From positions 1 through 64,000 of the IMG/VR virus record IMGVR_UViG_3300008954_003475: a DNA stretch of 64,000 nt. One strand, written 5' to 3'. Under the pieces are notes generated by a model. The model was given only the letters and a program-made list of their open reading frames with translations. It made no database searches and was not told the origin of the DNA. The translations under genes and the position numbers were made by a program. How positions within the stretch are numbered: position 1 is the stretch's first letter; every line of letters starts with the position of its first letter. Of the stretch, positions 6,360-35,703 are shown one piece after another.

Positions 6360-6586
6360 AGCCTTATTTCATTATTGATTTCAAATTGTTTATCAATATT
6401 GAAATCTATCTCTGGAGAATTTTCAGTTGACTTTACAGGATTCTTTTTTATAGGATATTCTACATCAGAATATTCTTTATGAAGAGGAATTCTTTTATCC
6501 TCTTTATCTTTATCTTCTTTTTGCTTTTTTATAATTGGGAATATAAATCCTCTCATGCTAACCCTCCTATAGAATTTTTGCAGCAT
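6356..6586 (-). CDS. Hypothetical protein (likely true start ATG 6556)
   Basis: Strong SD AGGAGG 6 nt before the in-frame ATG at 6556. Confidence 0.55.
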   Translation of the reverse strand: MLQKFYRRVSMRGFIFPIIKKQKEDKDKEDKRIPLHKEYSDVEYPIKKNPVKSTENSPEIDFNIDKQFEINNEIRL

Positions 6587-7862
6587 AAGCAGCCAGTGGA
6601 CTTCTCTCTCCTTTTAATAATGTAATATGAGCAGAAAGATGAAAATCCTTGAACTTCTCCGCAACGGCTCCTAAGCCAGAAGATGTAGAATCTAAATGCG
6701 GAGCATCTATTTGCTCTAAATCTCCAAGTAAAATTAATTTTGAATTTTCGCCCATTCTAGTTATTACAGCCTTAGCCTCTCTATAAGTAATGTTTTGAGC
6801 TTCATCAAGAATAAAAATAGTATTTGGAAGACTTCGGCCTCGAACATAAGAAAGAGCTTCAATCTCTATAGTTCCCTTTTGCATCATAATATCAAAATAA
6901 TGTTCTGCATTTTTAAATACACATTTAAAGTTGTCCATAATAGGCTGTATCCATGGCTCCATTTTATCAAATTTGCTTCCCGGCAAATATCCTATATCTC
7001 CACTAAGGCTTTGTACAGGTCTTGATATAATGATCTTCTCATAATGTCCTTCATTCAACAAGTGTATTGCCGCAGCTGTTGACATAAGCGTCTTTCCGCT
7101 TCCTGCTCTACCTGTAAGGGTTGCCATGTGTATATCTTTATCTAATAACATTTCTAAAGCAAATGTTTGCTCTTTATTTCTTGGACAAATTCCGTGTACG
7201 TTAAATCCACTTCTGCTTGTAAAGTTAAGCTTCTTAATAAAGCCATTCTTATAAACTGCTAAAGCACTTTGTCTACCACCTTTTAATACAAGATATTCGT
7301 TTGGGTAAAGCCTTTTATCTTCATATTGAAGTTTTCCACATTCATAAAATTTTTCAATTTCATTTGGAGAAAAATGCAATACGCTAACACCGCCATAAGC
7401 CTCTTTTCTGTTTGTTACGGCCTTTTCTCTATAATAATTTTCAGCCTTTAAACCCAAAGAGTCACATTTTACTCTTACGTTAATATCTCTAGAAATAAGC
7501 GCAACATTCTTTTCCTCTCTGGACAAGCCTAAGGCAACAGAGATTATTCTATTATCCCTAGTGTCCTCCATGCCTTCTGGCAAAATATTTAAATCTGATC
7601 TAAGAGAAACAAAGATTTTTTGACCATTTTCAAGAGTAACCCCTTCTGCTAAGTTGCCAATCTTTCTAAGATCATCCAAAAATCTATTTATATATCTGGC
7701 CGCATTTCCAACCGAATCATGTCTTTTTTTCAATCCATCTATTTCTTCCAAAACTTCCATTGGAATTACAATGTTATTTTTTGGGAATGCATGAATTGAA
7801 TCTTCATGATAAACTAGCACTGATGTGTCTAAAACAAACGTCTTTCTATTTCTTCTTGGCAA
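6567..7862 (-). CDS. phoH: PIN-PhoH (PhoH2-type) protein
   Basis: PIN motifs FVLDTSVL, DNRII, ISRDINVRVKC; Walker A GRAGSGKT; RGRS and DEAQN motifs; SD GGAGG before TTG. Confidence 0.92.
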   Translation of the reverse strand: MPRRNRKTFVLDTSVLVYHEDSIHAFPKNNIVIPMEVLEEIDGLKKRHDSVGNAARYINRFLDDLRKIGNLAEGVTLENGQKIFVSLRSDLNILPEGMEDTRDNRIISVALGLSREEKNVALISRDINVRVKCDSLGLKAENYYREKAVTNRKEAYGGVSVLHFSPNEIEKFYECGKLQYEDKRLYPNEYLVLKGGRQSALAVYKNGFIKKLNFTSRSGFNVHGICPRNKEQTFALEMLLDKDIHMATLTGRAGSGKTLMSTAAAIHLLNEGHYEKIIISRPVQSLSGDIGYLPGSKFDKMEPWIQPIMDNFKCVFKNAEHYFDIMMQKGTIEIEALSYVRGRSLPNTIFILDEAQNITYREAKAVITRMGENSKLILLGDLEQIDAPHLDSTSSGLGAVAEKFKDFHLSAHITLLKGERSPLAAYAAKIL

Positions 7863-7892: not shown

Positions 7893-8282
7893 TTATGCTT
7901 CATCAATCTCTTCTTCTATTATAGACCAATGTTCAACATTGGCTTCAAAATATAAATTTTTATCTTCATCTTCTTTTAGCGTTAAAACAGGCCCAGCCCA
8001 TTCTCCAATCACTTCGCCGTCATGCTTTACCTCTAAAGCATCTAGGCCAACATACTCTATTATCTCAATATCATTATAGATTAGATATTCTACAGCAACA
8101 TCAGAGGGCATATCAGACAACTCGTCTGTATCCACTCCTATGTAAAACAAAAGATCGCCCAACCATTGCTGTCTAACGTCTTTCACGTCTTTGGCAAAGT
8201 TAACACGATCTGTTAAGATTGTTGTGAACATACCACATGCGTTATAAGTAAGAGACGGAACACGATCCGCCGGCACATGCAA
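7893..8282 (-). CDS. Hypothetical protein
   Basis: Acidic 129-aa ORF between RNR and PhoH; start uncertain (possibly ATG 8231). Confidence 0.6.
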   Translation of the reverse strand: MHVPADRVPSLTYNACGMFTTILTDRVNFAKDVKDVRQQWLGDLLFYIGVDTDELSDMPSDVAVEYLIYNDIEIIEYVGLDALEVKHDGEVIGEWAGPVLTLKEDEDKNLYFEANVEHWSIIEEEIDEA

Positions 8283-10104
8283 GCTCTCCGGTCAGGTTTG
8301 TATTATCTTGATATTCTGTTATATAGTCTAAATTTACAGACTTAAGGCTTGACATCATTTTATCATAAGTCTCTTTATCGCAATCTTCAAATGGGGCCTG
8401 AATATATGTATGATCAGAGTAGGGTAAGACAGAAAGTCCATTATATACACCTCTGTTTTCCCACATCCACTCGAAGACCTCTTCCCATTCGTTATCTTTT
8501 ATACTTATTGTAGCAGATACATTATGAGTATTCTGCCCGCGAACATATCCGGGCCTTACCCACTCATTCGTTATTAAACGAATTCTTTCTAATAGATTAA
8601 TTGCACTTTCATCTCTCAGCATAGCTCCATCTGGAGCTTTCTGCGGGACACTTATAACGGCTGTATCGTGCGGCCGAAAATACTCATCCTCAATAAGTTC
8701 AGGATGATTTTTTTCTAAATATTGAAAAATAGCCTCATTCTTTCCAACCCTAAGCCTTCTAATGTAATACTCGTTATGCCAGGCATGAATTCCGCTTGAT
8801 GTACCTAACGTTAAAGACGTTGTTCCAGCAGGCTTCACGCAAGTAGTTCTCGTCGCTTGATTTATCCCTATTATGTTAGCAACTCTTTCGTTTTCTTCCT
8901 TGATAACAGAAACAGCTTTTGGCATATTTAAATTCACAACCTTGCCACTAGCTATGCCGGTCATACTTGCGCCAATCAAAGCATCTTTCTCTGTGCTTCT
9001 CTGCCAAATGGGCCGTAAATAGTGAAAATCAGTATAACTAGCTTGTAACGTCCCTATAAAAGCTGCGGCTCGCGCCCTTGTCTCAAGGTCCTCCTGAGAT
9101 TCAATATTGCTAACATTTATTTCAACCAAATTACAAAATTGAAATGGTCTTAGTCCAATTTCACAACAAGGGTTTGTTCCCCAGTCCTTATCGTTAGTCA
9201 AGTAAAAGCCAGGCTCTCCAGAGCCGCTAATACGAATTCTTTCCCATAAATTAGCAAAATATTTCTTAGTAATTCTATGCCTCATCAATACAGCTGAGTT
9301 ATTTGCGCGACCTCTTTGCGGATTTGTTTCCCACCAGTCTCCGGCCTTAGCTGCAATCATTTCGTCATCATCTGCAGAAAATAAAGAGATCAAAGCCGCA
9401 CGCCTTATCCCTCCGGCCAAGACAGCATCTGCAATATAACAGATCATATCATGAACCTCTATAGACCTAAGCTTGTCGCCGTTCTCCTTGGCGTCTAAGA
9501 TGCCCTCAAGCTTAACCAGACACTCCCTTAGGGGTTGTGGGCCCGGAGCCTTTCCTCCCGAGGTTATAAGCTTTGCCCCCTTTGGTCTAATATCAGAAAA
9601 ATCAAATCTTAACTTTGAAGTTCCCTTGAAATAAGATATAACCAAAGCTTTTACCGCATCTGCCCAACCCTCTATGGAGTCTGCAACAAGAAACCTTCTG
9701 GTTCTAGTATTGCTTGGCTTTCTTATCTCCGGCAAAGCCTCAACATGATGAAACTGAACAGAATACCCAACGCCAGTGCCTCCCAATAACAAAAACATTG
9801 CCTCACTGAATGCGCGAACATCATCTATTGGCATATAAGCACAGTTAAAAATTCTATTTGGAGCTACCTCTATAGACTTTCCGCCAAACTGCATAGAACG
9901 CATTGATGGCAGAACCTTTTTATCGTGAACAAACTCATAAACTGCATCAATTTCGCCCTCAAGAGCCGGAAACTTTTTGATATGCATATTTTTGTTTCTT
10001 GTTACTAATTCGTCCCAATTCTCTCGCCTTAATTCATCATCAAGGTGTCTCGCGTATTTCATGTGAACAGTTATATCTGATAAAATCTGTGACGATAGCT
10101 CCAT
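8242..10104 (-). CDS. nrdJ: Class II (adenosylcobalamin-dependent, monomeric RTPR-type) ribonucleotide reductase
   Basis: RIFNCAY, LLLGGTGVGYSV, TNPCCEI active-site motif, VKPAGTTSL, C-terminal CAGGSC redox pair; no small subunit adjacent. Confidence 0.9.
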   Translation of the reverse strand: MELSSQILSDITVHMKYARHLDDELRRENWDELVTRNKNMHIKKFPALEGEIDAVYEFVHDKKVLPSMRSMQFGGKSIEVAPNRIFNCAYMPIDDVRAFSEAMFLLLGGTGVGYSVQFHHVEALPEIRKPSNTRTRRFLVADSIEGWADAVKALVISYFKGTSKLRFDFSDIRPKGAKLITSGGKAPGPQPLRECLVKLEGILDAKENGDKLRSIEVHDMICYIADAVLAGGIRRAALISLFSADDDEMIAAKAGDWWETNPQRGRANNSAVLMRHRITKKYFANLWERIRISGSGEPGFYLTNDKDWGTNPCCEIGLRPFQFCNLVEINVSNIESQEDLETRARAAAFIGTLQASYTDFHYLRPIWQRSTEKDALIGASMTGIASGKVVNLNMPKAVSVIKEENERVANIIGINQATRTTCVKPAGTTSLTLGTSSGIHAWHNEYYIRRLRVGKNEAIFQYLEKNHPELIEDEYFRPHDTAVISVPQKAPDGAMLRDESAINLLERIRLITNEWVRPGYVRGQNTHNVSATISIKDNEWEEVFEWMWENRGVYNGLSVLPYSDHTYIQAPFEDCDKETYDKMMSSLKSVNLDYITEYQDNTNLTGELACAGGSCSVSYL

Positions 10105-10130: not shown

Positions 10131-10172
10131 AATAAAAAAAATCTTAGAGCCCCAACATGGAGGTCCTAAGAT
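10131..10172 (-). terminator. Putative intrinsic terminator after the sigma-factor gene
   Basis: Minus strand ATCTTAGGACCTCC-ATGTT-GGGGCTCTAAGAT imperfect hairpin followed by TTTTTTTATT. Confidence 0.6.
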
Positions 10173-10741
10173 AATATGGTTCTAAGCTTGTTTAGGCTGC
10201 AGTTTCTGATTTGTCTTATACGTTCTGTAGAAAGGTTAAATTTCGTTGCTATTTCATTTAGTCTTTTTCCGATAACTAAGTTGTCAATAACAATGTCTTT
10301 TTCTCTGTCGGATAAAATATTATTTTCATCAATAAACATCTTTTTAAATATTATTTTCATCTCTAACTCAACCTCTTTTTCGTTTAAAACATTACCAAAA
10401 TCACAGCTGCCTAATTCCTTTTTAATACCAGATTTTGCAATCGAAAATCGTTTAGAATTTGAATTGTAATCTCTAAGTTTTTTTGAAATATTCCATTGCG
10501 CCCATCTGAAGAAATCAAAGTTTTTTTGATAATCATATGTTAAGATTGCTTCCCACAATCCAATATAGGCTTCCTGAAATAGGTCTTCTTGAGAAGATAT
10601 ATTTTTATATTTTTTCGCTCTAGACTCTGCAAAGAATTTTGTCTGCACAAAAATATCGTGCATCCAATCCTTTGTATTCTTTTCTTCGTTTACGATATAT
10701 GTCATTTTTATATCAAGATTAGATAAATCGTAATAACTCAT
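10166..10741 (-). CDS. Sigma70-family RNA polymerase sigma factor (regions 2 and 4 only)
   Basis: Region 2 DLFQEAYIGLWEAILTYD...FFRWAQWNI; region 4 HTH LSDREKDIV...LNEIATKFNLSTERIRQI. Confidence 0.88.
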   Translation of the reverse strand: MSYYDLSNLDIKMTYIVNEEKNTKDWMHDIFVQTKFFAESRAKKYKNISSQEDLFQEAYIGLWEAILTYDYQKNFDFFRWAQWNISKKLRDYNSNSKRFSIAKSGIKKELGSCDFGNVLNEKEVELEMKIIFKKMFIDENNILSDREKDIVIDNLVIGKRLNEIATKFNLSTERIRQIRNCSLNKLRTILS

Positions 10742-10744
10742 TCT

Positions 10745-11326
10745 TTATTCATCCTCAGGGTTGTACTGATCCACAAACTCTCCGTCTTTCCAAGTCCTAA
10801 CTATAGAGGTTTCTTCTGACAAAGTAAAGACGGCAATAACATCATCTCTGGTCGAAAAAGATGCAGCACTTATGTGTCTAGTCCCACATCCCTCTGGAAC
10901 TTCTAATGCCGGATTGTCAACAAGCAGATATACTCTACCTCCTATAATTTGACCATTTCTATTGATAACAATAGCTCCATCGGCATCTTCTCTAAACAAA
11001 GCTTCTACGCTCTTCTTAGAAGAGGTTGTTGAAATATCTATATATTTTTGAATTGGATTAATCCCAATTTGTCGCATACCCGATACAAGATAATCTTTTG
11101 CTGTATCAAATACGCCAAACACAACCAGTATTCCTAACTTCTTTTGCCTATCTTTGTTTTCTTTAGATATTTCACACAATATATTGAATATCTTCTTTCC
11201 GACCTTCTGATGCTCTCTCGCAGCACTGAATTGGAAAGAAAAGTCAGTAGACGTAACCCTTTTGGGCGGCTCTACTGAAGTTGCCTGAATTTCTTCTTTC
11301 GACATGTACGACTCCATGGTTTCCAT
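10745..11326 (-). CDS. Stand-alone diadenylate cyclase (DisA_N/DAC) domain protein
   Basis: DAC motifs DADGAIVI (DGA) and GCGTRHISAA (RHR variant RHI); LSEET motif; no TM or DisA linker domain. Confidence 0.8.
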   Translation of the reverse strand: METMESYMSKEEIQATSVEPPKRVTSTDFSFQFSAAREHQKVGKKIFNILCEISKENKDRQKKLGILVVFGVFDTAKDYLVSGMRQIGINPIQKYIDISTTSSKKSVEALFREDADGAIVINRNGQIIGGRVYLLVDNPALEVPEGCGTRHISAASFSTRDDVIAVFTLSEETSIVRTWKDGEFVDQYNPEDE

Positions 11327-11335
11327 ATGAGGTAA

Positions 11336-11344
11336 ATTATACCA
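11336..11344 (-). promoter_or_regulatory. Extended -10 element TGGTATAAT upstream of the DAC gene
   Basis: TGn-TATAAT in an AT-rich intergenic gap, 9 nt before the ATG at 11326. Confidence 0.5.
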
Positions 11345-11398
11345 AGGATTTTAAATGTATAATTAAAAAAAATAAAAAAATTTAATTAAAAATAATTA

Positions 11399-12781
11399 TT
11401 AACTAAAGCCTAATTCATCATATGTGTAGTGAATAATGCGGGTCTCTGAATCGACCGTTTTTAAGTTTATTGGCCCACCCCAAACATCGTGGACATATCC
11501 CATAACCATTTCTAAATGTTTGACATCCAAAGTTCCAACATCTACACTGGCATGCTCCAACTGTAAAATTCCATCTTCAACGCCAACAATACAAATGAGA
11601 GGGGCTCTATAATTATAGAGATCTTTTATTATTGTTTCTTTGATAAAATCCAACTCTGTTCCAATTACCTCAATGGCGTCAATTCCATTTGCAGCCTTTA
11701 TTTGCTTAAAGGAAAAAAGCTTAAGATCTTTTGCCAAATCTTCTGTTAAATAATTTCTTATAAAAGAGATATCATCTTCATCTGCAACTATTTGATATAT
11801 TTTCTGAAAACCATTAATTTCAGATTCTCCATTTTTATGCTTTTCGTCCCATTCTTCTCGTATTTTTGTAAATATTGAAAAACCTAAAAAGTAAGGGTTT
11901 ATATTAAGATGATTCGATCCTGGTTGAACTACTTTTTCATGAATTTTACAAAAGTCAAGATATTCATGCTCTTCAACACAGCCTAGTTTTAACATAATCT
12001 CCGCATGAACAAAGCTTGCAAATCCTTCATTCATTATCTTGGTCATATATTGAGGATAAAAATAATAAGACTCTTGTCTTATTATCTCTAAAATATCTTT
12101 CTGCCAAGGCTCCAAGACTCTCGAATAATTAACCAAAAACCAAATAATATCAAACTCTTGAGACGGTGGAAAACCACTTTCTGCAGGAACCTCTTTGTAT
12201 GAAAAATCATGTGTTCCAAAAACATCATCAAATTCATCAAAACTTGTTTTTTTAAAATGTTTTTCGCCCTTTTTATACCTAGCTCTATTTGGCCCTTTAT
12301 GCCAATCTATATGTTTGTCTAAAGCAAATCCGATGTCCATAACTTTTTCAACTGTTTCAATTCCATACTTTTGTATATACTCCTCTATCCTCTGAGCCCT
12401 CTCGGCTGCATGATATACCATCTTGTTATCAGTTTGTTTGAATAAAAAATTATTTTTAAAAAAGTGAACATGACCAACGACATGCGCTGATACCATGGTG
12501 TTTGCTATGTCTGAATTTGTATCCAACAAGAATGCATAAGATGGGTCGTTATTAAGTACAACTTCATAAATCTTTGAAAAACCCATTTCTCCTTGCATTT
12601 TTTGATATTCATATGATTGCCCATAACTCCAGTGTCTAGCACGAGTAGGGAGGCCATAACTGATTACTTCTAACATTGTTTCTTGCGGAACAACCTCATA
12701 ATTTATTGGATAATAATCCAACTCCATATCATCTGCTATTTGTTCAATTTCTACAACTCTGTCTTTCAATAACTGATTCAC
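11399..12781 (-). CDS. spoVR: SpoVR/YcgB family protein
   Basis: LPTRARHWSYG, IYEVVLNNDPSYAFL, AHVVGHVHFFKNN, YFYPQYMTKIMNEGFASFVH. Confidence 0.92.
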   Translation of the reverse strand: MNQLLKDRVVEIEQIADDMELDYYPINYEVVPQETMLEVISYGLPTRARHWSYGQSYEYQKMQGEMGFSKIYEVVLNNDPSYAFLLDTNSDIANTMVSAHVVGHVHFFKNNFLFKQTDNKMVYHAAERAQRIEEYIQKYGIETVEKVMDIGFALDKHIDWHKGPNRARYKKGEKHFKKTSFDEFDDVFGTHDFSYKEVPAESGFPPSQEFDIIWFLVNYSRVLEPWQKDILEIIRQESYYFYPQYMTKIMNEGFASFVHAEIMLKLGCVEEHEYLDFCKIHEKVVQPGSNHLNINPYFLGFSIFTKIREEWDEKHKNGESEINGFQKIYQIVADEDDISFIRNYLTEDLAKDLKLFSFKQIKAANGIDAIEVIGTELDFIKETIIKDLYNYRAPLICIVGVEDGILQLEHASVDVGTLDVKHLEMVMGYVHDVWGGPINLKTVDSETRIIHYTYDELGFS

Positions 12782-12782
12782 A

Positions 12783-13976
12783 CTACACCTCTATCTGCTC
12801 TTTTGATCTGCTGTCAATATTGAAAAATGCCTTAAGAGCATCAAATACTTCTTCTCTAGACTTTATAACTATAGATACAAACCTAGTTCTCTTTATGTTT
12901 TTACTTAAAATTGACGAAAGCCTATTTTCTTCATTCATCCACGGGCTAAAATCTCCATTTGGAGCTATTTCCCCATACCCAATAGCTCTAACCATTGGCA
13001 ATAACTTTTTAACAAACTCTAAGGCACGCAAATTATCCTCCCCCCAATTGTCACCATCACTAAATTCAAAAACATAATTATTCCAAGATGATGGGGGATG
13101 ATTTGCCTGAATATGTTCATAAGCTAACTCAAATGCCGTACTGCAAAGAGTTCCTCCAGAATTTGATACTTTAAAAAACTCCTGCTCATTAACTATAAAC
13201 GCCCTTGCGTCGTGTGCAATAAATATTAACGAAATATTTTTATATCTTCTCTTAAGAAACTGAACCATCCAAAAGTAAAAACTCTTTGCAATATAAGTCT
13301 TCTCTTGACTCATGGATCCGCTGCGATCCATCATCAAGTAAACTGCCGCATTTGAATGATATTCTTTATTTGTTTCCCAATTTCTATATCTTAAATCATT
13401 TTCGTTAATTCCGCCAATCTTTGCATTGCCTTTTGCTGCATTTCTTTTTAAATTTTCAAAAAGAGTTTTCTTGATATCTATATTTGGAAATATACCCTTT
13501 TTCTCTATAGAGGATAAATCTTCAGTTTCCACTTCTATAGCCGAACTTTTATCTGGCTCCATCCAAGGGAGGTTTAGCTCTTCCAGCAAAATATCAACTA
13601 TCTCATCGATAGTAACTTCTGCATCGAAAACTGCCTCACCCTCTTTGTCTCCAGGCTTATCTCCTTCGGGCTTCTTCTCGCCTCTTTTTCTAAGTCGAAA
13701 CTTATCCCCAGGCTTGACATCAATCCCTTGACCAGTTTTGTCTTTATTTTTTAGCTTTCCATATTTAAACTTATATCTGTCTAAAAAACGTATAGGTATT
13801 TTAATCTTTTTATCACCATCTGATGTGATGATATTATATTCCGTTATAAGGTCTTTGCCATTTTTTCTTATGGCATCATTTATAAGCTTCTTATGCCTAT
13901 CGGAATCTCGCTTGCCCCTTTGCTTGAGCTTCCAGATATCCGATAAGCTTTTTTGCGCTTTCGGTGTATTGGACAT
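12783..13976 (-). CDS. yeaH: YeaH/YhbH (UPF0229/DUF444) VWA-like protein
   Basis: KRDSDRH N-terminus, DLRYR, MMDRSGSM (MIDAS DxSxS), SGGTLCSTA, FSDGDNW. Confidence 0.9.
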   Translation of the reverse strand: MSNTPKAQKSLSDIWKLKQRGKRDSDRHKKLINDAIRKNGKDLITEYNIITSDGDKKIKIPIRFLDRYKFKYGKLKNKDKTGQGIDVKPGDKFRLRKRGEKKPEGDKPGDKEGEAVFDAEVTIDEIVDILLEELNLPWMEPDKSSAIEVETEDLSSIEKKGIFPNIDIKKTLFENLKRNAAKGNAKIGGINENDLRYRNWETNKEYHSNAAVYLMMDRSGSMSQEKTYIAKSFYFWMVQFLKRRYKNISLIFIAHDARAFIVNEQEFFKVSNSGGTLCSTAFELAYEHIQANHPPSSWNNYVFEFSDGDNWGEDNLRALEFVKKLLPMVRAIGYGEIAPNGDFSPWMNEENRLSSILSKNIKRTRFVSIVIKSREEVFDALKAFFNIDSRSKEQIEV

Positions 13977-13977
13977 C

Positions 13978-15897
13978 TCAGCCTCTTGCCATTAACGAGC
14001 TTACATACCTTAATAATTTGTTTGCACTTGTTGCTGTATAATTATACTTTTCGCACAAAGTATTAATTACAACATTTATTCTCTTAAGCTCTTCCTCGTC
14101 TGGATTTCTTGCGCTTACAGTTAAACGGATAACGTCTTGTCTTTCATCGAAGAGTTGTCTCTCAAGCGCTTCACGTAACTTTGGATGATTTTTATAGTTA
14201 TAAGCTCCATCGCCAGATTTTGCAGATCTTAACATCTTTCTGTATATCTCTTGTCTAAAAGATTTCTTGCCGGACTCCGTAATTCCAACCTTCTCCTCAA
14301 TGGATCTCATCAGTCTTTCGTTTGGCTCAACATAATCTCCCCACTCATCTTCAATCGTTGTTCCATCAAGAGATGCGCCAACATGGTCCATATAATTATT
14401 AAGAAGACTTTGAACCTCTTCTTCAAAATTAACGAAGAATGCTTTTTGAACTTCATTTCTTGCAATTTTGCTATACTCCTCTATAACTGAGGTTAATATA
14501 TTTTCAAGCTTCTCTATGGCTTTGGGGTCTAATTTTGGATTACTTGCAAATCCGTCTCTAATAGATCTTATTATATCAACTGGAGTAATGCAGTTTGCGC
14601 CATCTTCGGCCAAAGTTGATGAAATCCTATTTATAATATATCTTGGAGATATTCCCGTCATGCCTTCTGAATCAAATTCTTTTCTAAGAAGGGGAACGTC
14701 TGATTGTGAAAAACCCTCAACCTCTTCTTCGTTGTATAAGCGCATTTTGCTCATTACGGATAAGCCTTCATGCTTTGAATCTTTAAGCCTAGAAAGTACA
14801 GCAAACATAGCTGCGCAATAAAGAGTATATGGCGCTATATGCACACCCTCAAAGGTTGCTTGGCCTATTAACTTTTCATATATCTTAACTTCTTCATTTA
14901 CACTTAAATTATATGGAATCTTTATGACAATAATTCTATCGTGCAAAGCTTCCATCTCGTCTTTGGCTAAAAATCTTTTATATTCTGTTTCATTTGTATG
15001 TGCTAGTAAAAATTCATCTGCATAAATGAAGGGATAGCGTCCTGTTTTTATATTCTTTTCTTGAGCCAGTGTTAGTAAGACATATAAGAATTTTTGATCA
15101 ACCTTTAACATCTCAACAAATTCCATAAGCCCTCTGTTGGCTATGTTCAACTCTCCATCAAACCTATACGCCCTCGGGTCTGACTCTGAACCAAATTCTC
15201 CAATTTTACTCAAGTCCATTGACCCGACAAGCTCTGAAATGTCTTGGCTTTTCTTATCCGATGGAACGAAGGTGCCTATCCCAACTCTTGACTGTTCAGA
15301 AAAACACACCCTGCTTACAGGTAGCTCTAAAAAGTCTCCATCATGATTCTCTTTCAGCATCAACTCCATATAGGGGCTTAATTGGCCATCTATTTTGATC
15401 CCATAATCACTCAAAAACTGACCTCTCAATTTATGCGGAATCGCACAAAGAGGGTCTTCAAACATTGGAGAATCTTTTAGACAATATACTGTTCCATCGT
15501 CTGTTCTGGTAAACTCTTCAAGCCCTCTCTTTAGCAATACGGCCAATTGAGATTTTCCAGATGATGTAGGTCCATACAAAAGAAGTATTCTTCTAGAAAC
15601 TTCGCTCCCTGCTGCAGCGGCTCGTAAGTATGACATTATTTCGCCAATTGATTCATTAATTCCAAATAAATCATTTGCAAAGAAAGAATATTCTTCAATA
15701 TCTCCATCCTCACCCCTTACAATTCCAGCACTCTCAATCATCCTTAAGGTTCTTGAGTGCGCATTCATATGAATCTCTGGCTTCTTAATAACAAGATTAA
15801 TATAATCTCGAAGAGTGCCCTCCCACTTCAAAGACGTTGTCTCCTCTATGTGTTCATCTAAGGACTTAAAGAGTTTTGTAGTATTCTTTTTTGGCAT
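13978..15897 (-). CDS. prkA: PrkA/YeaG family AAA+ ATPase/kinase
   Basis: Walker A YGPTSSGKS, DISELVGS, DPRAYRFDGELNIANRGLMEFVEMLK, GISPRY. Confidence 0.93.
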   Translation of the reverse strand: MPKKNTTKLFKSLDEHIEETTSLKWEGTLRDYINLVIKKPEIHMNAHSRTLRMIESAGIVRGEDGDIEEYSFFANDLFGINESIGEIMSYLRAAAAGSEVSRRILLLYGPTSSGKSQLAVLLKRGLEEFTRTDDGTVYCLKDSPMFEDPLCAIPHKLRGQFLSDYGIKIDGQLSPYMELMLKENHDGDFLELPVSRVCFSEQSRVGIGTFVPSDKKSQDISELVGSMDLSKIGEFGSESDPRAYRFDGELNIANRGLMEFVEMLKVDQKFLYVLLTLAQEKNIKTGRYPFIYADEFLLAHTNETEYKRFLAKDEMEALHDRIIVIKIPYNLSVNEEVKIYEKLIGQATFEGVHIAPYTLYCAAMFAVLSRLKDSKHEGLSVMSKMRLYNEEEVEGFSQSDVPLLRKEFDSEGMTGISPRYIINRISSTLAEDGANCITPVDIIRSIRDGFASNPKLDPKAIEKLENILTSVIEEYSKIARNEVQKAFFVNFEEEVQSLLNNYMDHVGASLDGTTIEDEWGDYVEPNERLMRSIEEKVGITESGKKSFRQEIYRKMLRSAKSGDGAYNYKNHPKLREALERQLFDERQDVIRLTVSARNPDEEELKRINVVINTLCEKYNYTATSANKLLRYVSSLMARG

Positions 15898-16187
15898 TAT
15901 AAGGTTTCTCCATATACATCTAATATAGCTTTTGTATCACCTAACTTTATTTTATTAACAATCTTTCTAGCTTCTTCTTTGGCATCAGCCAATATTTCTT
16001 CTTTACCCTTTGATATCTTACTAGATGAAGAATTAAATATTCTAATAAATTTAGATACAGTATCACATTTTTTACATTTTTGATCATATAACACATCTTT
16101 ATTCTCTAAAGATAAATAATCTGATATAGACATAGTTATAGACTCCTCCGTATCACACTTTCCACATTTAAAATTATACTTAGCCAT
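15897..16187 (-). CDS. FmdB-like zinc-ribbon protein
   Basis: YNFKCGKC...CKKC paired CxxC; 1-nt overlap with the prkA start. Confidence 0.65.
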   Translation of the reverse strand: MAKYNFKCGKCDTEESITMSISDYLSLENKDVLYDQKCKKCDTVSKFIRIFNSSSSKISKGKEEILADAKEEARKIVNKIKLGDTKAILDVYGETL

Positions 16188-16377
16188 CTATACTACCTGA
16201 TATATTACTAGTAAAGAAAACTTCATCACCATCAAACTTTAATTGACCAGAGAGAGATAAATCTCTTAAAATCTTCTTTTTAAATTTATTATCAGTAATA
16301 AAAATGACTATCTCCATATCATTTGACTCTGAATCATATTTTATATTTTTTATTTTTCCAACATTTTTTTCCAACAT
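16180..16377 (-). CDS. Hypothetical protein
   Basis: 65-aa ORF packed between neighbours. Confidence 0.55.
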   Translation of the reverse strand: MLEKNVGKIKNIKYDSESNDMEIVIFITDNKFKKKILRDLSLSGQLKFDGDEVFFTSNISGSIDG

Positions 16378-16379
16378 TT

Positions 16380-16766
16380 CTATATACCCTCTAAAGCTTT
16401 TACAATATGAGGATTGGGTCTGTTTGCTAAAAATAACAAATCTGATTTATCTATTTTTGTTAAATTTTCTATCATATAAAATGGTACAGACAAAACAGGC
16501 GCTTCAACCTTATCTTTGTCAGAAAAGAATTGTTCAAGAGGAAGAACGTCTATAAAGCATTGAGATTTACTAACCTGTATAACAAGATATCTCGCCTCTT
16601 GGTTCTCCCAGATTGTACTCATTGAAACAATATCTTTCGATCTTATCTTGGCCACTTTTTCTTTATAATTCATACCTTCATCTACAAGCTTTGCATCAAA
16701 TATCATTCTCGTCTCCAAACTCTTCTGCCCAATCATCTGGAAACTTCTCAATGCGAGATTTATCAA
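16380..16766 (-). CDS. Hypothetical protein (likely true start ATG 16706)
   Basis: SD GGAG 6 nt before the in-frame ATG at 16706 (MIFDAKLV). Confidence 0.6.
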   Translation of the reverse strand: MINLALRSFQMIGQKSLETRMIFDAKLVDEGMNYKEKVAKIRSKDIVSMSTIWENQEARYLVIQVSKSQCFIDVLPLEQFFSDKDKVEAPVLSVPFYMIENLTKIDKSDLLFLANRPNPHIVKALEGI

Positions 16767-18090: not shown

Positions 18091-18733
18091 TTACGAACAA
18101 CTCCACATGATGACTTCTCAAAGATTTGAATGATTTAGCAAAAAACCCTCCAAATATTTGGTCTACATCTTCATCATTAGAACAAAGAATGGTTGGAAGT
18201 TGGTTTTGAAATCTTGTACGCAAAACATATTCTAAAGAAGAGCCAAAAATCTGCTCAGCTTTATCGGATGGAAAAATCCAATGTGAACTAAATTCATCAA
18301 TTACTAAAAAATCTTTATTTAATAATTCACTATAATACTTAGCAGTATCTAGCTCTTTAGATAGCATATTGGCAACCACATCGGCCATTGTGGTGTAAAG
18401 CCCAGAGTAACCAGATGCAACAGCTCTTTTTAACACACAACATGCCGTATAGGTCTTTCCCGTTCCAAGGCCGCCTGTGAACATAAATGATTTTCCACTA
18501 TCATATAAATTATTTATGTTTTCTATTTTTGTTTTTACAAACTTCTTAAAGTTCGGATCACCTGCAAAGTCTTTGAAGGACAATTCCCAATATTCCACAG
18601 GAATATTTGACAAAGCATATCTGTCAAGCCTGGATGCTTTGGACGAGCATGTGCCACAGCCCATACCGTCACAAGCCTTGCAAGACTCTTTTACCTTCTG
18701 CTTTACTCTGTCAATCTTAGTCTTTGGTATCAT
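18056..18733 (-). CDS. DnaC/IstB-like helicase loader ATPase
   Basis: Zn-finger CKACDGMGCGTC, Walker A GGLGTGKT, Walker B LVIDE, RFQNQLPTILCSN; adjacent to DnaB. Confidence 0.85.
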   Translation of the reverse strand: MIPKTKIDRVKQKVKESCKACDGMGCGTCSSKASRLDRYALSNIPVEYWELSFKDFAGDPNFKKFVKTKIENINNLYDSGKSFMFTGGLGTGKTYTACCVLKRAVASGYSGLYTTMADVVANMLSKELDTAKYYSELLNKDFLVIDEFSSHWIFPSDKAEQIFGSSLEYVLRTRFQNQLPTILCSNDEDVDQIFGGFFAKSFKSLRSHHVELFVIGGKDFRRKNA

Positions 18734-19187
18734 CTTCGCTTACTTTGAAATTTATACTTGTTTTATTTAAAGGCTCAATATCAGCCCCTGATTCATCAGA
18801 TGAGGGTAAGGCATTTCCACCTGCAAAAAATACAGACAAATCATTATCTTCCTCTTCTGGTATATTGCTTAATAACGCCCCCGGTATAGACATACTGGAC
18901 TCATCATAAGATATGCTATTCATGGGGAAAGTGTCAGAAACAGAGTTGCCTCGCCTGCTTTCACCTGCCCTTTCAGAAGAGGAAGAGGCCGCCGCAAGCG
19001 GCATAGTCCTAGCGCTTTCTGACAGCAACAAACAAGCGACCTTTTCCTTAAATACCATAAACAGATTTCCATCCTGCTCAACAGTAAACCTATTATCCTC
19101 AAAAGATTTTACTTCGCCCGTTATTTGCCACCCACCATCTAAAAATAATGTAACAGTTTTTCCGACCAAACTTTCTTTACTATTCAT
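18717..19187 (-). CDS. Hfq/Sm-like fold protein with acidic disordered tail
   Basis: VTLFLDGGWQITGEVKSFED...MVFKEKV aligns by eye to the Hfq Sm1/Sm2 motifs (VSIYLVNGIKLQGQIESFD...MVYKHAI). Confidence 0.6.
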   Translation of the reverse strand: MNSKESLVGKTVTLFLDGGWQITGEVKSFEDNRFTVEQDGNLFMVFKEKVACLLLSESARTMPLAAASSSSERAGESRRGNSVSDTFPMNSISYDESSMSIPGALLSNIPEEEDNDLSVFFAGGNALPSSDESGADIEPLNKTSINFKVSEDDTKD

Positions 19188-19783: not shown

Positions 19784-19851
19784 GATAAATCGCCTCCATG
19801 TAAATGGTACCTCTGCTATACAAACTTAACTATTCAAATAAAAATATTATA

Positions 19852-21384: not shown

Positions 21385-21412
21385 AAGGAGATTCCGTAGG
21401 AGTCCTCAAAAT

Positions 21413-21441
21413 ATTATACGCCCTTAACCATAAGAGGGCAA
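21413..21441 (-). promoter_or_regulatory. Sigma70-type promoter TTGCCC-N17-TATAAT
   Basis: -35 at 21441-21436 and -10 at 21418-21413 with a 17-nt spacer, in the gap upstream of the helicase/replication block. Confidence 0.6.
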
Positions 21442-21458
21442 CAAACTGATAACTAACT

Positions 21459-22397
21459 TTACTTATCGCTACAGAATAAACTTTGACTGACTTCGCCAAG
21501 AAGCCCTGGCATGTCCATCCCTGCACAATCTATCTTTGTTCTTACAAAGTTATAATGATTAGAGAAGCCTTCAAAACTGCCATCTTCGCAGCCGCTATGC
21601 ACAGTGGTGCATAATGTGCCATCAGAATTTTGCGGATATTCTAATGGAATTCCAAGCCCTAAATGAACAGCTTTCCACAAAGCTTTTAGGGCTTCAATTT
21701 GGACAGGATAAAACCACATAAAAGGTTTTTGTGTTTTTCCATGCACCTGTCCATTCTCTTGCAATGGTCTTTCACCAAACCCATTTTCAACGTACCAGTC
21801 CTGGTACTTTGGATAATAAGCATTGCTTATCTCTATGCCAATACTTTTTTTATTTCCATGGTATTTGCTGCAATGCCACGCCCCATGTTGCGTATCTAAT
21901 AGTTGATATATTGTTCCATCATTGTCTAAACAAAAATGGACTGATATTCCCCTTCTATTCAATATATTTGCACATGTTTCTGCAGACAAACATACATCCC
22001 AATGATTAACAAACATAGAAGGCTCTCTATCTGGCTTTCCGGAGTTATCATAATACTTTCCAGGGGTTATAGCCAAACCATCCGGCTCGTCCCATAAAAC
22101 CACCTGGGGCCAATCAATTGGCAAAAACTTACCATTATGGACAATAAAATTACTTTCATTATTTAATGTAGATCTTTTCTTTGGTTTATAATTTGATATC
22201 TCGACTTGCCTTTCGGTCCATATCCTCCTATAGGTCATTGGACCGACAAGCCCATCTGCCGTTACCTTGTGGGCTCTTTGCCACTTTTTAACTTTGTTTA
22301 CCAAATCTTCATCAAAATGTTCAGCGCCAAACCAACTAGGGCTCCACCCCAACTTTAATGAGCTAGATTCATTATAGAAGTCTTTGTCCACAGCCAC
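21459..22397 (-). CDS. N-acetylmuramoyl-L-alanine amidase (Amidase_2) with N-terminal peptidoglycan-binding domain (endolysin-like)
   Basis: PG-binding VKKWQRAHKVTADGLVGPMT; amidase motifs VNHWD, VHFCLDNDGTIYQ, AWH, SIGIEI, NHYNF...KIDC; SD AGGAGG before GTG. Confidence 0.85.
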   Translation of the reverse strand: MAVDKDFYNESSSLKLGWSPSWFGAEHFDEDLVNKVKKWQRAHKVTADGLVGPMTYRRIWTERQVEISNYKPKKRSTLNNESNFIVHNGKFLPIDWPQVVLWDEPDGLAITPGKYYDNSGKPDREPSMFVNHWDVCLSAETCANILNRRGISVHFCLDNDGTIYQLLDTQHGAWHCSKYHGNKKSIGIEISNAYYPKYQDWYVENGFGERPLQENGQVHGKTQKPFMWFYPVQIEALKALWKAVHLGLGIPLEYPQNSDGTLCTTVHSGCEDGSFEGFSNHYNFVRTKIDCAGMDMPGLLGEVSQSLFCSDK

Positions 22398-28063: not shown

Positions 28064-28101
28064 GACTATAATTACTCATATTGGACAAAATTAATAATAG
28101 A

Positions 28102-28476
28102 TCAGCGCCCATAGTCATCCTCTATCCTTATAACATCATCCAGCTGCTTTGTGCTTACCTCAAACAACTCAACATCTTCATCTTTTGCTATAAACCTATG
28201 AGTATAAAATGGTGGAATATGAAATGTCATTCCTTCCTTTAATATAATCGTTCGCCTAGAACCATCAAACCCCTCTGCGGCATGTCCTCCTGTTTCTAGG
28301 TATAGAATTCCAGATTTAACAAAAATAGTCTCCTCTTTTTCTTCATGATATTGAAAAGACAACCTGTGGCCTGCTTTGATAAACAATATTTTGCCCACAT
28401 AGCCATTTTCGCAAGAAGACTTTGCCCAAATTATCTCATGGCCCCAAGGCTTTTCTATTTTTTTACAATATTCCAT
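28102..28476 (-). CDS. Cupin protein (mannose-6-phosphate isomerase type II C-terminal-like)
   Basis: KPWGHE, RLSFQYHEEKEET, HIPPFYTHRF, EVST. Confidence 0.8.
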   Translation of the reverse strand: MEYCKKIEKPWGHEIIWAKSSCENGYVGKILFIKAGHRLSFQYHEEKEETIFVKSGILYLETGGHAAEGFDGSRRTIILKEGMTFHIPPFYTHRFIAKDEDVELFEVSTKQLDDVIRIEDDYGR

Positions 28477-28483
28477 TATATGT

Positions 28484-31143: not shown

Positions 31144-31152
31144 TTTGCATAA

Positions 31153-33502: not shown

Positions 33503-33518
33503 AACCTTCTAAGCATCC

Positions 33519-35644: not shown

Positions 35645-35703
35645 ATTTTAATATTTTTTATTGCTCTTATTCTAAATTATATTTATTAAATAATATAAAG
35701 AAC

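What the first reader, a model, noticed from the sequence alone, without database searches (positions are those of the whole stretch)
10166..16187. Possible integrated host-state control cassette: Zn-ribbon, PrkA, YeaH, SpoVR, DAC, sigma factor
Seen: six co-oriented genes ending at the terminator at 10131-10172. Known: PrkA, YhbH, SpoVR, a DAC (DisA/CdaS) and alternative sigma factors all act in dormancy programmes in spore-formers. Inference: their juxtaposition may form an undescribed phage system that senses or overrides host starvation/dormancy and reroutes transcription.
Basis: inference. Interest (0 to 1): 0.62.

Follow-up and report, generated by a model that had tools for sequence, protein, structure and literature searches.

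The report
Phage PrkA stress operon with cyclase
A clade of very large marine phages carries an intact, strongly conserved copy of the bacterial PrkA-YhbH-SpoVR starvation-response operon, joined to a phage-type zinc-ribbon gene and a small cyclic-di-AMP-synthase-like gene; it probably lets the phage impose a starvation-type protein-recycling state on its host, and it is not a spore-former dormancy switch.

Summary
The six co-oriented genes exist as described: a Zn-ribbon protein, PrkA, YhbH/DUF444, SpoVR, a DAC-domain protein and a sigma-70-family factor, ending at a hairpin plus T-run.

They are not one six-gene system. The core is the cellular prkA-yhbH-spoVR (yeaG-yeaH-ycgB) operon, in the same order as in 74-78 of 79 cellular loci. 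At least four other phage groups also carry it (Thermus phages, Ralstonia RsoM2USA, huge phages of the LR75xxxx series), so the triad in phages is already on record.

New here:
- A soluble DAC of about 186-193 aa follows SpoVR in 12 of 13 related marine huge-phage lineages that reach that far. It is absent from eight other PrkA-bearing phage records.
- A Zn-ribbon gene sits directly upstream of PrkA, both in this clade and in a distant 595-kb phage.
- Relatives carry inteins inside SpoVR and an intein-like insert in PrkA.
- The SpoVR model resembles zincin metallopeptidases.

The sigma factor is present in only about half of the lineages. The phage is from seawater, so the spore-former framing is not supported.

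Most likely function (inferred): the phage drives YeaG-type bulk proteolysis and stress reprogramming, with cyclic-dinucleotide signalling as a linked or parallel module.

The parts
16380..16766 (-). g128, a small protein of unknown function. Its longest ORF overlaps the DnaB 3' end; it is weakly conserved upstream of the cassette.
   Evidence: ORF. No Pfam, PHROG or PADLOC hit. 26-44% identical orthologues sit in the same position in relatives. dN/dS is 0.12 against L021.
16180..16377 (-). g65, a 65-aa protein of unknown function. It overlaps the Zn-ribbon gene start by 8 nt.
   Evidence: Found in all clade members except L101, at 47-65% identity. dN/dS is 0.18. No family hit.
15897..16187 (-). 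FmdB-like CxxC...CxxC zinc-ribbon protein (96 aa). Its stop overlaps the PrkA start by 1 nt.
   Evidence: Zn_ribbon_8 scores 21 bits, below cut-off. phrog_385 'transcriptional regulator' matches at 3.5e-6. C8, C11, C38 and C41 are invariant in 12 orthologues. ESM-Atlas neighbours are viral FmdB-type clusters. An analogous Zn-ribbon ORF lies directly upstream of PrkA in the distant huge phage LR756511 (L102:11597-11893). None was found upstream of prkA in 79 cellular loci; the single pattern match, L078, is a Cys-poor GC-rich ORF that I take for chance.
13978..15897 (-). PrkA/YeaG-family AAA+ ATPase (639 aa).
   Evidence: PF08298 at 2.4e-112 and PF06798 at 1e-69. Walker A GPTSSGKS with K115, and the aromatic-Gly F235-G236, read and conserved. 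Matches PDB 9xip 'Serine protein kinase' at 1.4e-126. 48-52% identical to Chloroflexota and Acidobacteriota PrkA. dN/dS is 0.04.
12783..13976 (-). YhbH/YeaH (DUF444) vWA-type protein (397 aa) with MIDAS motif D217-x-S219-x-S221.
   Evidence: PF04285 at 4.5e-87. TIGR02877 scores 380.6 bits, below its 468 cut-off. Motif read. dN/dS is 0.08.
11399..12781 (-). SpoVR/YcgB-family protein (460 aa); the model is zincin-like.
   Evidence: PF04293 at 1.6e-108. H50, W51, H100, H104, N251, E252, G253 and H259 are invariant in 43 phage and cellular sequences. AF2 model has pLDDT 81. Most of the 50 listed VIA-wide matches are zinc metallopeptidases, at Z 6.5-11.9. Intein insertion sites in relatives fall in the two conserved motifs. 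dN/dS is 0.06.
11327..11398 (-). AT-rich spacer with an extended -10-like box: TG at 11344-11343 and TATAAT at 11341-11336. It is a possible internal promoter for DAC and sigma.
   Evidence: Read. Similar TATAAT boxes occur in the spacers 19784-19851 and 21385-21458. Consensus only; not tested.
10745..11326 (-). Minimal soluble diadenylate-cyclase-domain protein. It is 193 aa from the first ATG, but more likely 186 aa from Met8 at 11305.
   Evidence: PF02457 scores 51 bits against a cut-off of 27. The best NCBIfam hit is DacZ at 58 bits, far below its cut-off. DGA, GTRH and SEE are invariant, with RHI in place of RHR in 33 sequences. AF2 model has pLDDT 76.7. Foldseek top hits are CdaA, DacA and DisA at probability 1.0. 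178 homologues were found; the 120 listed are 125-207 aa, nearly all about 180-200 aa.
10166..10741 (-). Small sigma-70-family factor with regions 2 and 4 only (191 aa).
   Evidence: PF04542 and PF04545 both exceed their cut-offs; TIGR02937 scores 53.5 bits. phrog_351 matches at 2.4e-16. It follows DAC in only about half of the related lineages, at 30-42% identity.
10133..10172 (-). Intrinsic-terminator-like hairpin (10172-10141) plus T-run. It overlaps the sigma stop codon.
   Evidence: a stem of 8+4 pairs, loop, then T7. The whole 86-nt fold has z = -0.57, so support rests on the hairpin and T-run anatomy, not on energy.

Best explanation
Shown:
- The region is a phage-resident copy of the widespread bacterial prkA-yhbH-spoVR (yeaG-yeaH-ycgB) operon.
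- It sits inside the replication and nucleotide-metabolism block (PhoH-PIN, RNR, DnaB, DnaC-like, UvsW) of a marine huge phage. The record is 222 kb and about 66% complete; complete relatives are 335-395 kb.
- The operon is kept under purifying selection as strong as that on DnaB.
- It is flanked by phage-specific additions. Upstream lie a 65-aa protein and an FmdB-like Zn-ribbon protein. Downstream lies a minimal soluble DAC-fold protein of a family that the word search found only in marine metagenome and virus contigs. In about half of the lineages a small sigma-70-family factor follows.

Inferred mechanism:
- PrkA (an AAA+ ATPase with Walker A and a pore-loop-like aromatic-Gly), YhbH (a vWA/MIDAS adaptor) and SpoVR (zincin-like, with an HxxxH helix and an NEG...H helix) act together as an ATP-driven protein-remodelling or degradation module.
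- This is the module that YeaG-dependent starvation proteolysis needs in E. coli.
- Expressed with the replication genes, it would put the host cytoplasm into a starvation-type recycling state that frees amino acids and energy for phage synthesis in nutrient-poor seawater.
- The DAC makes c-di-AMP or a related cyclic dinucleotide. It would either reset host K+/osmolyte and stress physiology in step with the triad, or serve as a signal against nucleotide-based defence.
- The sigma factor is a separate, facultative piece of the phage's own transcription programme.
For: - Domain identities.
- Same gene order as cells: prkA-yhbH-spoVR in 74-78 of 79 Chloroflexota and Acidobacteriota loci.
- The triad occurs together in every independent PrkA-bearing phage examined.
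- 16 related viral contigs keep g65-Znr-PrkA-YhbH-SpoVR-DAC.
- dN/dS is 0.04-0.08 for the triad against 0.05 for DnaB.
- Inteins with LAGLIDADG domains sit in SpoVR at two invariant motifs, and an intein-like insert sits in the PrkA sensor-1 region. Such elements usually persist in indispensable sites.
- SpoVR model versus zincin peptidases.
- DAC fold and motifs.
- By longest-ORF calls, DAC overlaps SpoVR or lies 21 nt or less from it in seven lineages.
- A Zn ribbon precedes PrkA in the distant phage LR756511.

Literature:
- The YeaG, YeaH and YcgB mutants are cofit in six bacteria (10.1101/072470).
- YeaG is required for bulk starvation proteolysis (PMC13684143).
- The PrkA Walker A motif is needed for function (PMC9512850).
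- PrkA is a clade-III AAA+ protein without its own peptidase site, and the mutant is sensitive to osmotic stress (PMC13001217).
Against: - There are no expression data. No RNA run holds the sequence.
- The host is unknown.
- Conservation within the clade may be inherited synteny rather than functional coupling.
- Outside the clade, DAC never accompanies the triad, either in phages or in the five cellular genomes checked.
- The biochemical activity of PrkA is disputed: weak protease activity in PMC9512850, none in pure protein in PMC13001217.
- SpoVR lacks the Glu of HExxH (it has V101). Its structural Z scores of 8-12 lie in the range that helical models can reach by chance. Foldseek and a profile search of PDB gave nothing.
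- The DAC has RHI instead of RHR.
- The PrkA plus Zn-ribbon complex prediction gave no verdict.
Confidence: 0.5

Rival explanations
1. All six genes form one integrated phage system that senses host starvation or dormancy (as in spore-formers) and reroutes transcription through the sigma factor.
For: The six genes are adjacent and tightly packed and end at one terminator. Each family has a role in Bacillus sporulation (PMC9512850, PMC13001217).
Against: The sigma factor follows DAC in only about 6 of 12 lineages and evolves fast, at 30-42% identity. A second sigma factor lies at 160.5 kb. DAC is absent from eight other PrkA phages and from L101. The source is seawater. The triad works in non-sporulating bacteria. 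No sensor domain was detected.
Confidence: 0.08
2. Only the triad is a unit. The DAC is an independent neighbour whose job is counter-defence. It would supply c-di-AMP or cUA so that Panoptoo-type guard systems (a PanS DAC plus a PanE effector), which fire when their decoy signal is depleted, stay off. Alternatively it would perturb other nucleotide-based immunity.
For: Minimal DAC-only proteins are active synthases in anti-phage defence, and their RHR motif is only partly conserved (10.64898/2026.08.10.743927). The phage DAC is minimal and soluble with DGA and GTRH intact. In this genome it has its own promoter-like box and a 72-nt spacer. It is absent from other triad-bearing phages.
Against: No PADLOC hit, although that library predates Panoptoo. 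In seven lineages DAC overlaps or nearly abuts SpoVR, which suggests co-translation with the triad. No sponge gene or PanE-like partner was looked for or found. The host and its defences are unknown.
Confidence: 0.2
3. PrkA acts as a protein kinase in the manner of T7 Gp0.7, phosphorylating host proteins for takeover. YhbH and SpoVR would be accessory signalling proteins rather than parts of a proteolytic machine.
For: The family was first described as a Ser kinase, and YeaG was reported to autophosphorylate and to phosphorylate AceA (cited in PMC9512850). The C-terminal PrkA domain is present.
Against: No kinase activity was found for the B. subtilis or B. anthracis protein, and the P-loop of the C-terminal domain is degenerate. 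The YeaG phenotype in E. coli is bulk proteolysis.
Confidence: 0.1
4. The triad serves phage morphogenesis, for example prohead or scaffold processing, rather than host manipulation.
For: In Thermus phage Lalka8 the three genes lie between the portal and minor head genes and TerL. In YS40_Isch they lie about 4 kb from the terminase gene.
Against: In the marine clade the triad lies among replication genes. In RsoM2USA and LR756511 it is not next to recognised structural genes. The cellular homologues have no assembly role.
Confidence: 0.05

Closest known systems
Cellular prkA-yhbH-spoVR / yeaG-yeaH-ycgB operon (E. coli SpdA/YeaG starvation-induced proteolysis; B. subtilis and B. anthracis PrkA)
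   Same: It has the same three families in the same order. Walker A, MIDAS and the invariant SpoVR residues are all present. PrkA is 48-52% identical to Chloroflexota and Acidobacteriota proteins.
   Different: It is carried by a virus. All three score below the NCBIfam equivalog cut-offs. A Zn-ribbon gene and a 65-aa gene lie upstream and a DAC downstream, none of which occurs in 79 cellular loci. It sits among replication genes, not in an RpoS or sigma-E regulon.
PrkA/SpoVR/vWA genes of Thermus phages phiYS40, TMA, phiLo and Lalka8, Ralstonia jumbo phage RsoM2USA, and huge phages LR756511, LR756502, LR745206 and LR756504
   Same: The triad is present and clustered in each (SpoVR was not detected in LR756502); identities to the window proteins are 29-36% for PrkA and 22-35% for YhbH and SpoVR. 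LR756511 also has a Zn ribbon directly upstream of PrkA.
   Different: Their whole records contain no DAC. The gene order is rearranged in the Thermus phages. They probably arose by separate acquisitions; RsoM2USA best matches gammaproteobacterial proteins (PMC8504454).
Diadenylate cyclases CdaA/DacA, DisA, CdaS and DacZ, and the minimal defence DAC PanS
   Same: It has the DAC fold, with Foldseek probability 1.0 and target-normalised TM 0.6-0.7 to CdaA. The DGA, GTRH and SEE motifs are present.
   Different: It has no membrane helices, no DisA HhH domain and no PanE partner. The N-terminus is a single long helix with a conserved DFSFQF motif. RHR is replaced by RHI in all 33 sequences. It scores far below every equivalog cut-off. 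The word search found relatives only on marine metagenome and virus contigs.
Phage-encoded sigma factors (phrog_351; ECF-like sigma-70 factors with regions 2 and 4)
   Same: Regions 2 and 4 are present, and TIGR02937 exceeds its cut-off.
   Different: It has no assignable subfamily and is only a facultative neighbour of the cassette.

Membership tests
PrkA/YeaG AAA+ family | AAA_PrkA (PF08298) and PrkA C-terminal (PF06798) domains above Pfam cut-offs | tested here: met
   376 and 235.6 bits against a cut-off of 25.
PrkA/YeaG AAA+ family | Walker A lysine (B. subtilis K108), required for function | tested here: met
   GPTSSGKS with K115, invariant in 11 orthologues. The requirement is from PMC9512850.
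PrkA/YeaG AAA+ family | Equivalog of E. coli YeaG (NF011999, cut-off 576 bits) | tested here: not met
   294 bits. It is a family member, not an equivalog.
PrkA/YeaG AAA+ family | ATPase activity, protein degradation or kinase activity | not testable with these tools
   This needs biochemistry. The literature itself is divided.
YhbH/YeaH (DUF444, vWA-like) | PF04285 above cut-off and a MIDAS DxSxS motif | tested here: met
   293 bits. D217-R-S-G-S221 read.
YhbH/YeaH (DUF444, vWA-like) | Sporulation protein YhbH equivalog (TIGR02877, cut-off 467.95) | tested here: not met
   380.6 bits.
SpoVR/YcgB | PF04293 above cut-off | tested here: met
   363.5 bits. NF008737 scores 225.7 bits, below its 679 cut-off.
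Zincin (gluzincin) metallopeptidases, considered for SpoVR | HExxH helix plus a downstream Glu ligand helix in a zincin fold | tested here: inconclusive
   Fold matches have Z 6.5-11.9 and are mostly zinc peptidases. H100-x3-H104 and N251-E252 are invariant.
Diadenylate cyclase (DAC, PF02457) | DAC domain above cut-off and DAC fold | tested here: met
   51.2 bits against a cut-off of 27. Foldseek matches CdaA, DacA and DisA at probability 1.0.
Diadenylate cyclase (DAC, PF02457) | [quoted passage not shown] | tested here: inconclusive
   DG is invariant and the Ala nearly so. G-T-R-H is invariant, but the second Arg is Ile in all 33 sequences. Active defence DACs also keep only selected residues of these motifs.
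DisA / CdaA / CdaS / DacZ subfamilies | Subfamily equivalog score and accessory domains (HhH, TM helices, YojJ helices, DacZ N-domain) | tested here: not met
   DacZ scores 58 against a 430 cut-off, CdaS 22 against 225, DisA 19 against 201, and CdaA 19 against 189. The only extra element is one N-terminal helix.
Panoptoo (PanS DAC plus PanE effector) | Two-gene operon of a minimal DAC with an S2TM-beta membrane effector | tested here: not met
   The neighbours are SpoVR and a sigma factor or RNR. It is considered only as a possible target of the phage DAC.
Sigma-70 family, group-4-like | Regions 2 and 4 above cut-off | tested here: met
   PF04542 scores 31.8 against 24, PF04545 29.1 against 24.1, and TIGR02937 53.5 against 42.9.
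FmdB-type zinc ribbon | Zn_ribbon_8 / TIGR02605 above cut-off | tested here: not met
   21 bits against 34.4, and 20.7 against 31.3. Even so, the four Cys are invariant and the Atlas neighbours are FmdB-type viral clusters.
A single six-gene 'cassette' | Co-occurrence of all six genes across related and unrelated phages | tested here: not met
   The triad is always present. The Zn ribbon occurs in the clade plus LR756511. DAC occurs only in the clade and is missing in L101. The sigma factor is present in about half of the lineages.

The most novel reading that the evidence does not exclude
The phage carries a self-contained 'starvation-mimic' module with two parts.
- The first is a split, FtsH-like degradation machine. 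PrkA is the AAA+ motor, SpoVR supplies a zincin-type peptidase in trans, YhbH is the vWA adaptor, and a phage Zn-ribbon protein retargets or activates it.
- The second is the first bona fide phage diadenylate cyclase. Its cyclic dinucleotide either coordinates host osmotic and metabolic shut-down or silences decoy-guard immunity.

Together they would convert host protein into phage biomass in oligotrophic seawater.
Probability: 0.15. Interest if true: 0.85.

Novelty: new variant of a known kind. Interest (0 to 1): 0.55.

Why it matters
The YeaG/PrkA-YeaH-YcgB triad is among the most widespread bacterial stress modules whose biochemistry is still unknown. In October 2026 it was linked to bulk starvation proteolysis.

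Several observations argue that the module gives phages a direct benefit:
- Unrelated phages have captured the whole operon repeatedly.
- One abundant marine huge-phage clade keeps it under selection as tight as that on its replicative helicase.
- Inteins sit in its conserved motifs.

The phage versions are compact, diverge naturally from one another, and carry extra partners. The intein sites mark two invariant SpoVR motifs as candidate active-site positions, so the phage genes offer a new handle on the mechanism.

A DAC-fold enzyme that is conserved in phages would also add cyclic-di-AMP-type signalling to the list of messengers that viruses make themselves. That bears on osmoregulation, and on the newly described DAC-based defence systems.

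Tried and rejected
- blastn of the 6-kb region against INPHARED phages found no match.
- tblastn of the phage DAC against the same collection found no match.
- A canonical CdaA-type DAC domain (from Pyrinomonas, L111) hit 22 records. The 20 listed are unannotated records of 2-50 kb (most under 20 kb), from faecal samples or labelled Listeria, Enterococcus or Staphylococcus phage. I take these for host DNA; this was not followed up.
- PADLOC gave nothing except a sigma-region hit to MzaA.
- Complex prediction on PrkA plus the Zn-ribbon protein scored 0.00. This is no verdict, neither for nor against binding.
- Foldseek of the SpoVR model against PDB found nothing at E <= 0.001. A profile of 43 SpoVR sequences against PDB sequences also found nothing.
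- A second viral-contig scan with the PrkA alignment returned only the same clade plus L101. A census of distant viral PrkA loci was therefore limited to the 17 INPHARED records.
- Terminase_6C was not found in G000, G001 or G002. The viral nature rests instead on the IMG/VR record, on complete relatives (CheckV 100%), one with terminal repeats, on a baseplate-wedge hit, and on replication and lysis genes.
- No RNA run holds the region, so read laying was not used and nothing can be said about transcripts.
- 'No cellular close relative of the DAC' therefore rests only on the word-based search.
- Host inference failed. The genome has one tRNA-Leu. SD-like motifs lie upstream of 53% of ORFs against 14% background, which argues only weakly against a Bacteroidota host.
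- A 'Candidatus Pacearchaeota' MAG contig with 89% identical PrkA (L021) has the full phage synteny. I take it for a mis-binned phage fragment, not a host clue.

Full report
**Observation**

The window is the first 64 kb of a 221,878-bp IMG/VR virus record that CheckV rates about 66% complete.

ORF listing shows the six minus-strand genes at the stated coordinates. Family scans confirm what they are:
- PrkA: PF08298 at 2.4e-112 and PF06798 at 1e-69.
- YhbH/DUF444: 4.5e-87, and 380 bits on the spore_yhbH model.
- SpoVR: 1.6e-108.
- A DAC-domain protein: 51 bits against a cut-off of 27.
- A sigma-70 factor with regions 2 and 4: TIGR02937 at 53.5 bits against 42.9.

The Zn-ribbon call is below threshold by score. 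However, its four cysteines are invariant in twelve orthologues, and its nearest ESM-Atlas clusters are viral FmdB-type ribbons.

The terminator is a hairpin at 10172-10141 followed by seven T. It overlaps the sigma stop codon. The consensus scanner missed it.

Co-orientation itself means little, because 146 of 165 large ORFs of the genome lie on this strand.

**Boundaries and likely transcription units**

Genes overlap or lie 3 nt or less apart from 19783 down to the SpoVR stop. In order they are g199, an Hfq-like ORF, a DnaC-like loader, DnaB, g128, g65, Znr, PrkA, YhbH and SpoVR.

A 72-nt AT-rich spacer then carries a TGgTATAAT box at 11344-11336, ahead of DAC and sigma. Similar boxes stand in the spacers at 19784-19851 and 21385-21458.

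The DAC probably starts at Met8 (11305). That start has a GGAG upstream, and a 100%-identical 186-aa form is on record on 10 contigs.

From the sequence I infer two units. The first runs from the replication genes to SpoVR, and the second holds DAC and sigma. Read-through between them is possible. No RNA data exist to test this.

**Context and viral nature**

The flanks are a PhoH-PIN fusion, a class II RNR, DnaB, an IstB/DnaC-like ATPase, a UvsW-like helicase, an amidase and a glycosyltransferase-tubulin fusion. Further along lie a block of glycosyltransferases and a baseplate-wedge homologue.

Relatives include genomes of 335 kb (with terminal repeats) and 395 kb, both rated 100% complete.

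Sequencing runs that hold the region are seawater or marine metagenomes from 13 studies.

**The core is a captured cellular operon**

A genome scan with an alignment of the phage PrkAs returned 79 cellular loci, from Chloroflexota (mainly Ktedonobacteria) and Acidobacteriota (Pyrinomonadaceae), at 48-52% identity. The scan seeds on two peptide patterns, so the donor cannot be named from it.

- 78 of the 79 loci have yhbH and 74 have spoVR downstream, in the phage order.
- None shows the Zn-ribbon gene, g65 or the phage-type DAC.
- In five of those genomes the Pfam DAC family is either absent or hundreds of kb away from prkA.

The literature shows that the three genes form one operon in most bacteria, and that their mutants are cofit (r > 0.7) in six non-sporulating species (10.1101/072470).

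**The triad in phages is not new**

tblastn found PrkA in 17 GenBank phage records. The triad is clustered in every record I opened:
- Thermus phages Lalka8, YS40_Isch and phiLo, in a rearranged order and near packaging genes.
- Ralstonia jumbo phage RsoM2USA.
- Four huge phages of 595-642 kb; SpoVR was below my tblastn threshold in one of them, LR756502.

These genes are annotated as serine kinase and SpoVR in the deposited records and in PMC8504454, without functional study. Repeated capture of the whole operon by unrelated phages is itself evidence of a benefit to phages.

**What the marine clade adds**

Sixteen related viral contigs (PrkA 66-77% identical), plus a mis-binned 'Pacearchaeota' MAG contig at 89%, keep the order g65-Znr-PrkA-YhbH-SpoVR-DAC next to DnaB.

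- DAC follows SpoVR in every lineage that reaches that far except L101, where a cupin gene takes its place.
- By longest-ORF calls, DAC overlaps SpoVR or lies 21 nt or less from it in seven lineages.
- The sigma gene follows DAC in only about six of twelve lineages, at 30-42% identity. In the others an RNR gene follows directly.
- The genome has a second sigma factor at about 160.5 kb.
- Whole-record searches found no DAC in eight other PrkA-bearing phages.
- A Zn_ribbon_8-like 98-aa ORF lies directly upstream of PrkA in LR756511, whose PrkA is only 34% identical. This is the one accessory link seen in two distant lineages.

**Selection and inteins**

Against the 89% relative, dN/dS is:
- 0.04 for PrkA, 0.08 for YhbH and 0.06 for SpoVR;
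- 0.05 for DnaB, for comparison;
- 0.34 for Znr and 0.18 for g65.

Synonymous sites are saturated for the DAC pairs, with dN of 0.10-0.18.

In several relatives SpoVR is a single ORF of 828-884 aa that contains an intein with a LAGLIDADG domain. Two insertion sites are used:
- after residue about 255, in the motif MNEGFA|S;
- at about residues 100-105, in the motif AHVVGHVHF.

One PrkA has an in-frame intein-like insert at LLAH|TNE, the sensor-1 region. Its Intein_splicing score of 21.5 bits is below cut-off.

Free-standing DUF7487 and Vsr-like ORFs are inserted between the genes in other relatives.

The two SpoVR sites coincide with residues that are invariant across 43 phage and cellular sequences: H100, H104, N251, E252, G253 and H259.

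**SpoVR fold**

An AF2 model (pLDDT 81) found nothing by Foldseek. An exhaustive VIA-align search gave a list made up mostly of zinc metallopeptidases at Z 6.5-11.9. It includes oligoendopeptidase F, M1 aminopeptidases, M32 carboxypeptidases, thermolysin, LasB, ACE, M61 and collagenases.

H100-x3-H104 has the spacing of HExxH, and N251-E252 resembles the gluzincin NExxSD ligand motif (from my own knowledge of these families).

Three cautions apply. The residue after H100 is Val, not Glu. Z values in this range can arise by chance for helical models. I could not inspect the coordinates. This is a lead, not a finding.

It fits one report. Pure B. anthracis PrkA is a clade-III AAA+ protein like YME1 and FtsH, has a pore loop but no peptidase site of its own, and shows no protease activity (PMC13001217). 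The phage PrkA has the Walker A motif (K115) and an aromatic-Gly at 235-236. It also matches the solved chains 9xip, 9xiq and 9xir at 1.4e-126.

**The DAC**

The word-based search found 178 homologues. The 120 listed are 125-207 aa, nearly all about 180-200 aa, and come from metagenome assemblies (JGI, ENA, Logan, Tara Oceans). None carries a cellular name.

D116-G117 is invariant and A118 nearly so; G148-T149-R150-H151 and S170-E171 are invariant. The second Arg of RHR is Ile in all 33 aligned sequences.

The model (pLDDT 76.7) has one long N-terminal helix and a DAC core. Its best Foldseek matches are CdaA, DacA, DacM and DisA, at probability 1.0.

A 2026 preprint shows that minimal DAC-only proteins (PanS) are active, make c-di-AMP or cUA, and keep only selected residues of the two motifs (10.64898/2026.08.10.743927). 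I therefore rate catalytic competence as likely but unproven.

My two searches of the paper library for a phage diadenylate cyclase returned no paper describing one.

A canonical CdaA-type query hit 22 phage-collection records. The 20 listed are unannotated and 2-50 kb long.

**How it most likely works**

Shown: the gene identities, the operon structure, conservation, selection, and distribution across phages and cells.

Inferred:
- The triad acts as in cells. In cells YeaG is required for starvation-induced, largely non-specific degradation of cytoplasmic proteins, which supplies amino acids and ATP (PMC13684143).
- A huge phage that replicates in nutrient-poor seawater would gain from switching this on together with its replication and nucleotide-supply genes.
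- PhoH and RNR are next door, which gives a parallel to host DNA recycling.
- The Zn-ribbon and g65 proteins are candidates for phage-specific regulators or adaptors.

For the DAC I cannot choose between two roles:
- Physiological coupling. c-di-AMP controls K+ and osmolyte balance, and prkA mutants of B. anthracis are osmosensitive.
- Counter-defence against decoy-guard systems of the Panoptoo type.

The sigma factor is best seen as part of the phage's transcription programme that happens to sit here in some lineages.

**Verdict**

The spore-former dormancy framing and the idea of one six-gene system are not supported. The triad in phages is already on record.

The conserved DAC partner, the Zn-ribbon association, the inteins and the zincin-like SpoVR model are new, and they make a testable case. 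I rate it a new variant of a known kind, with interest 0.55.

Noticed in passing
L006:14893-17502, L009:14675-17290, L014:18989-21643, L011:13904-16477, L018:12258-14744: SpoVR genes of related phages carry in-frame inteins with LAGLIDADG homing-endonuclease domains. The inteins use two different insertion sites, and both fall in invariant SpoVR motifs.
   Followed up: partly
L018:8039-11062: This PrkA is one 1008-aa ORF with an in-frame insert of roughly 350-370 aa at the sensor-1 region (LLAH|TNE). The Intein_splicing hit scores only 21.5 bits, below cut-off.
   Followed up: partly
L006:13151-14914, L014:11908-13857, L014:16964-18574: Free-standing DUF7487 ORFs, some with Vsr/DUF559-like nuclease or HTH parts, are inserted between the cassette genes in some relatives. 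They look like homing-endonuclease-type mobile genes.
   Followed up: no
window 22397-24871 (-): An 824-aa ORF combines a group-1 glycosyltransferase domain with a tubulin/FtsZ GTPase domain.
   Followed up: no
window 26579-42057 (-): A long run of glycosyltransferase and nucleotide-sugar epimerase genes (phrog_2170, phrog_540) suggests that the phage encodes its own glycan synthesis or modification.
   Followed up: no
window 46676-56635 (-) and 42017-46618 (-): Giant ORFs of 3319 aa and 1533 aa lie next to a baseplate-wedge homologue (56644-59970). No PHROG hit was found for the 1533-aa protein; the 3319-aa ORF was not scanned.
   Followed up: no
window 6567-7862 (-): A PIN-PhoH fusion protein lies two genes downstream of the cassette. 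PhoH is a phosphate-starvation marker gene common in marine phages.
   Followed up: no
window 8242-10104 (-); L008:15051-18248; L016:15802-18249; L101:14864-17296: The gene after the cassette is always a ribonucleotide reductase, but of different types and sizes. It is RTPR-like (class II) here, and longer in relatives, some with inteins and one with a TSCPD domain.
   Followed up: partly
L021 (NZCX01000035.1, 8231 bp): A contig filed under a 'Candidatus Pacearchaeota archaeon' MAG carries the phage synteny DnaB-g128-g65-Znr-PrkA-YhbH-SpoVR-DAC at 71-90% identity. It is probably a mis-binned phage fragment.
   Followed up: partly
L005 (IMGVR_UViG_3300007513_000004, 223,402 bp): A second IMG/VR record is 99-100% identical over the 16 proteins compared in this region. 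It places the region at 123-145 kb rather than 4-26 kb, which suggests a circularly permuted or differently cut assembly of the same phage.
   Followed up: no
window 18717-19187 (-): A 156-aa ORF between the DnaC-like gene and g199 has a weak Hfq-domain match of 23 bits, below cut-off.
   Followed up: no
G000:C1:160470-160664 (-): A second sigma-70-family gene (open frame 280 aa) lies far from the cassette. Relatives have one to three sigma genes each.
   Followed up: partly
L012 record (IMGVR_UViG_3300009703_004110, 332 kb): IMG/VR classes this 99%-complete relative as a provirus. If that is correct, its ends could reveal the host.
   Followed up: no
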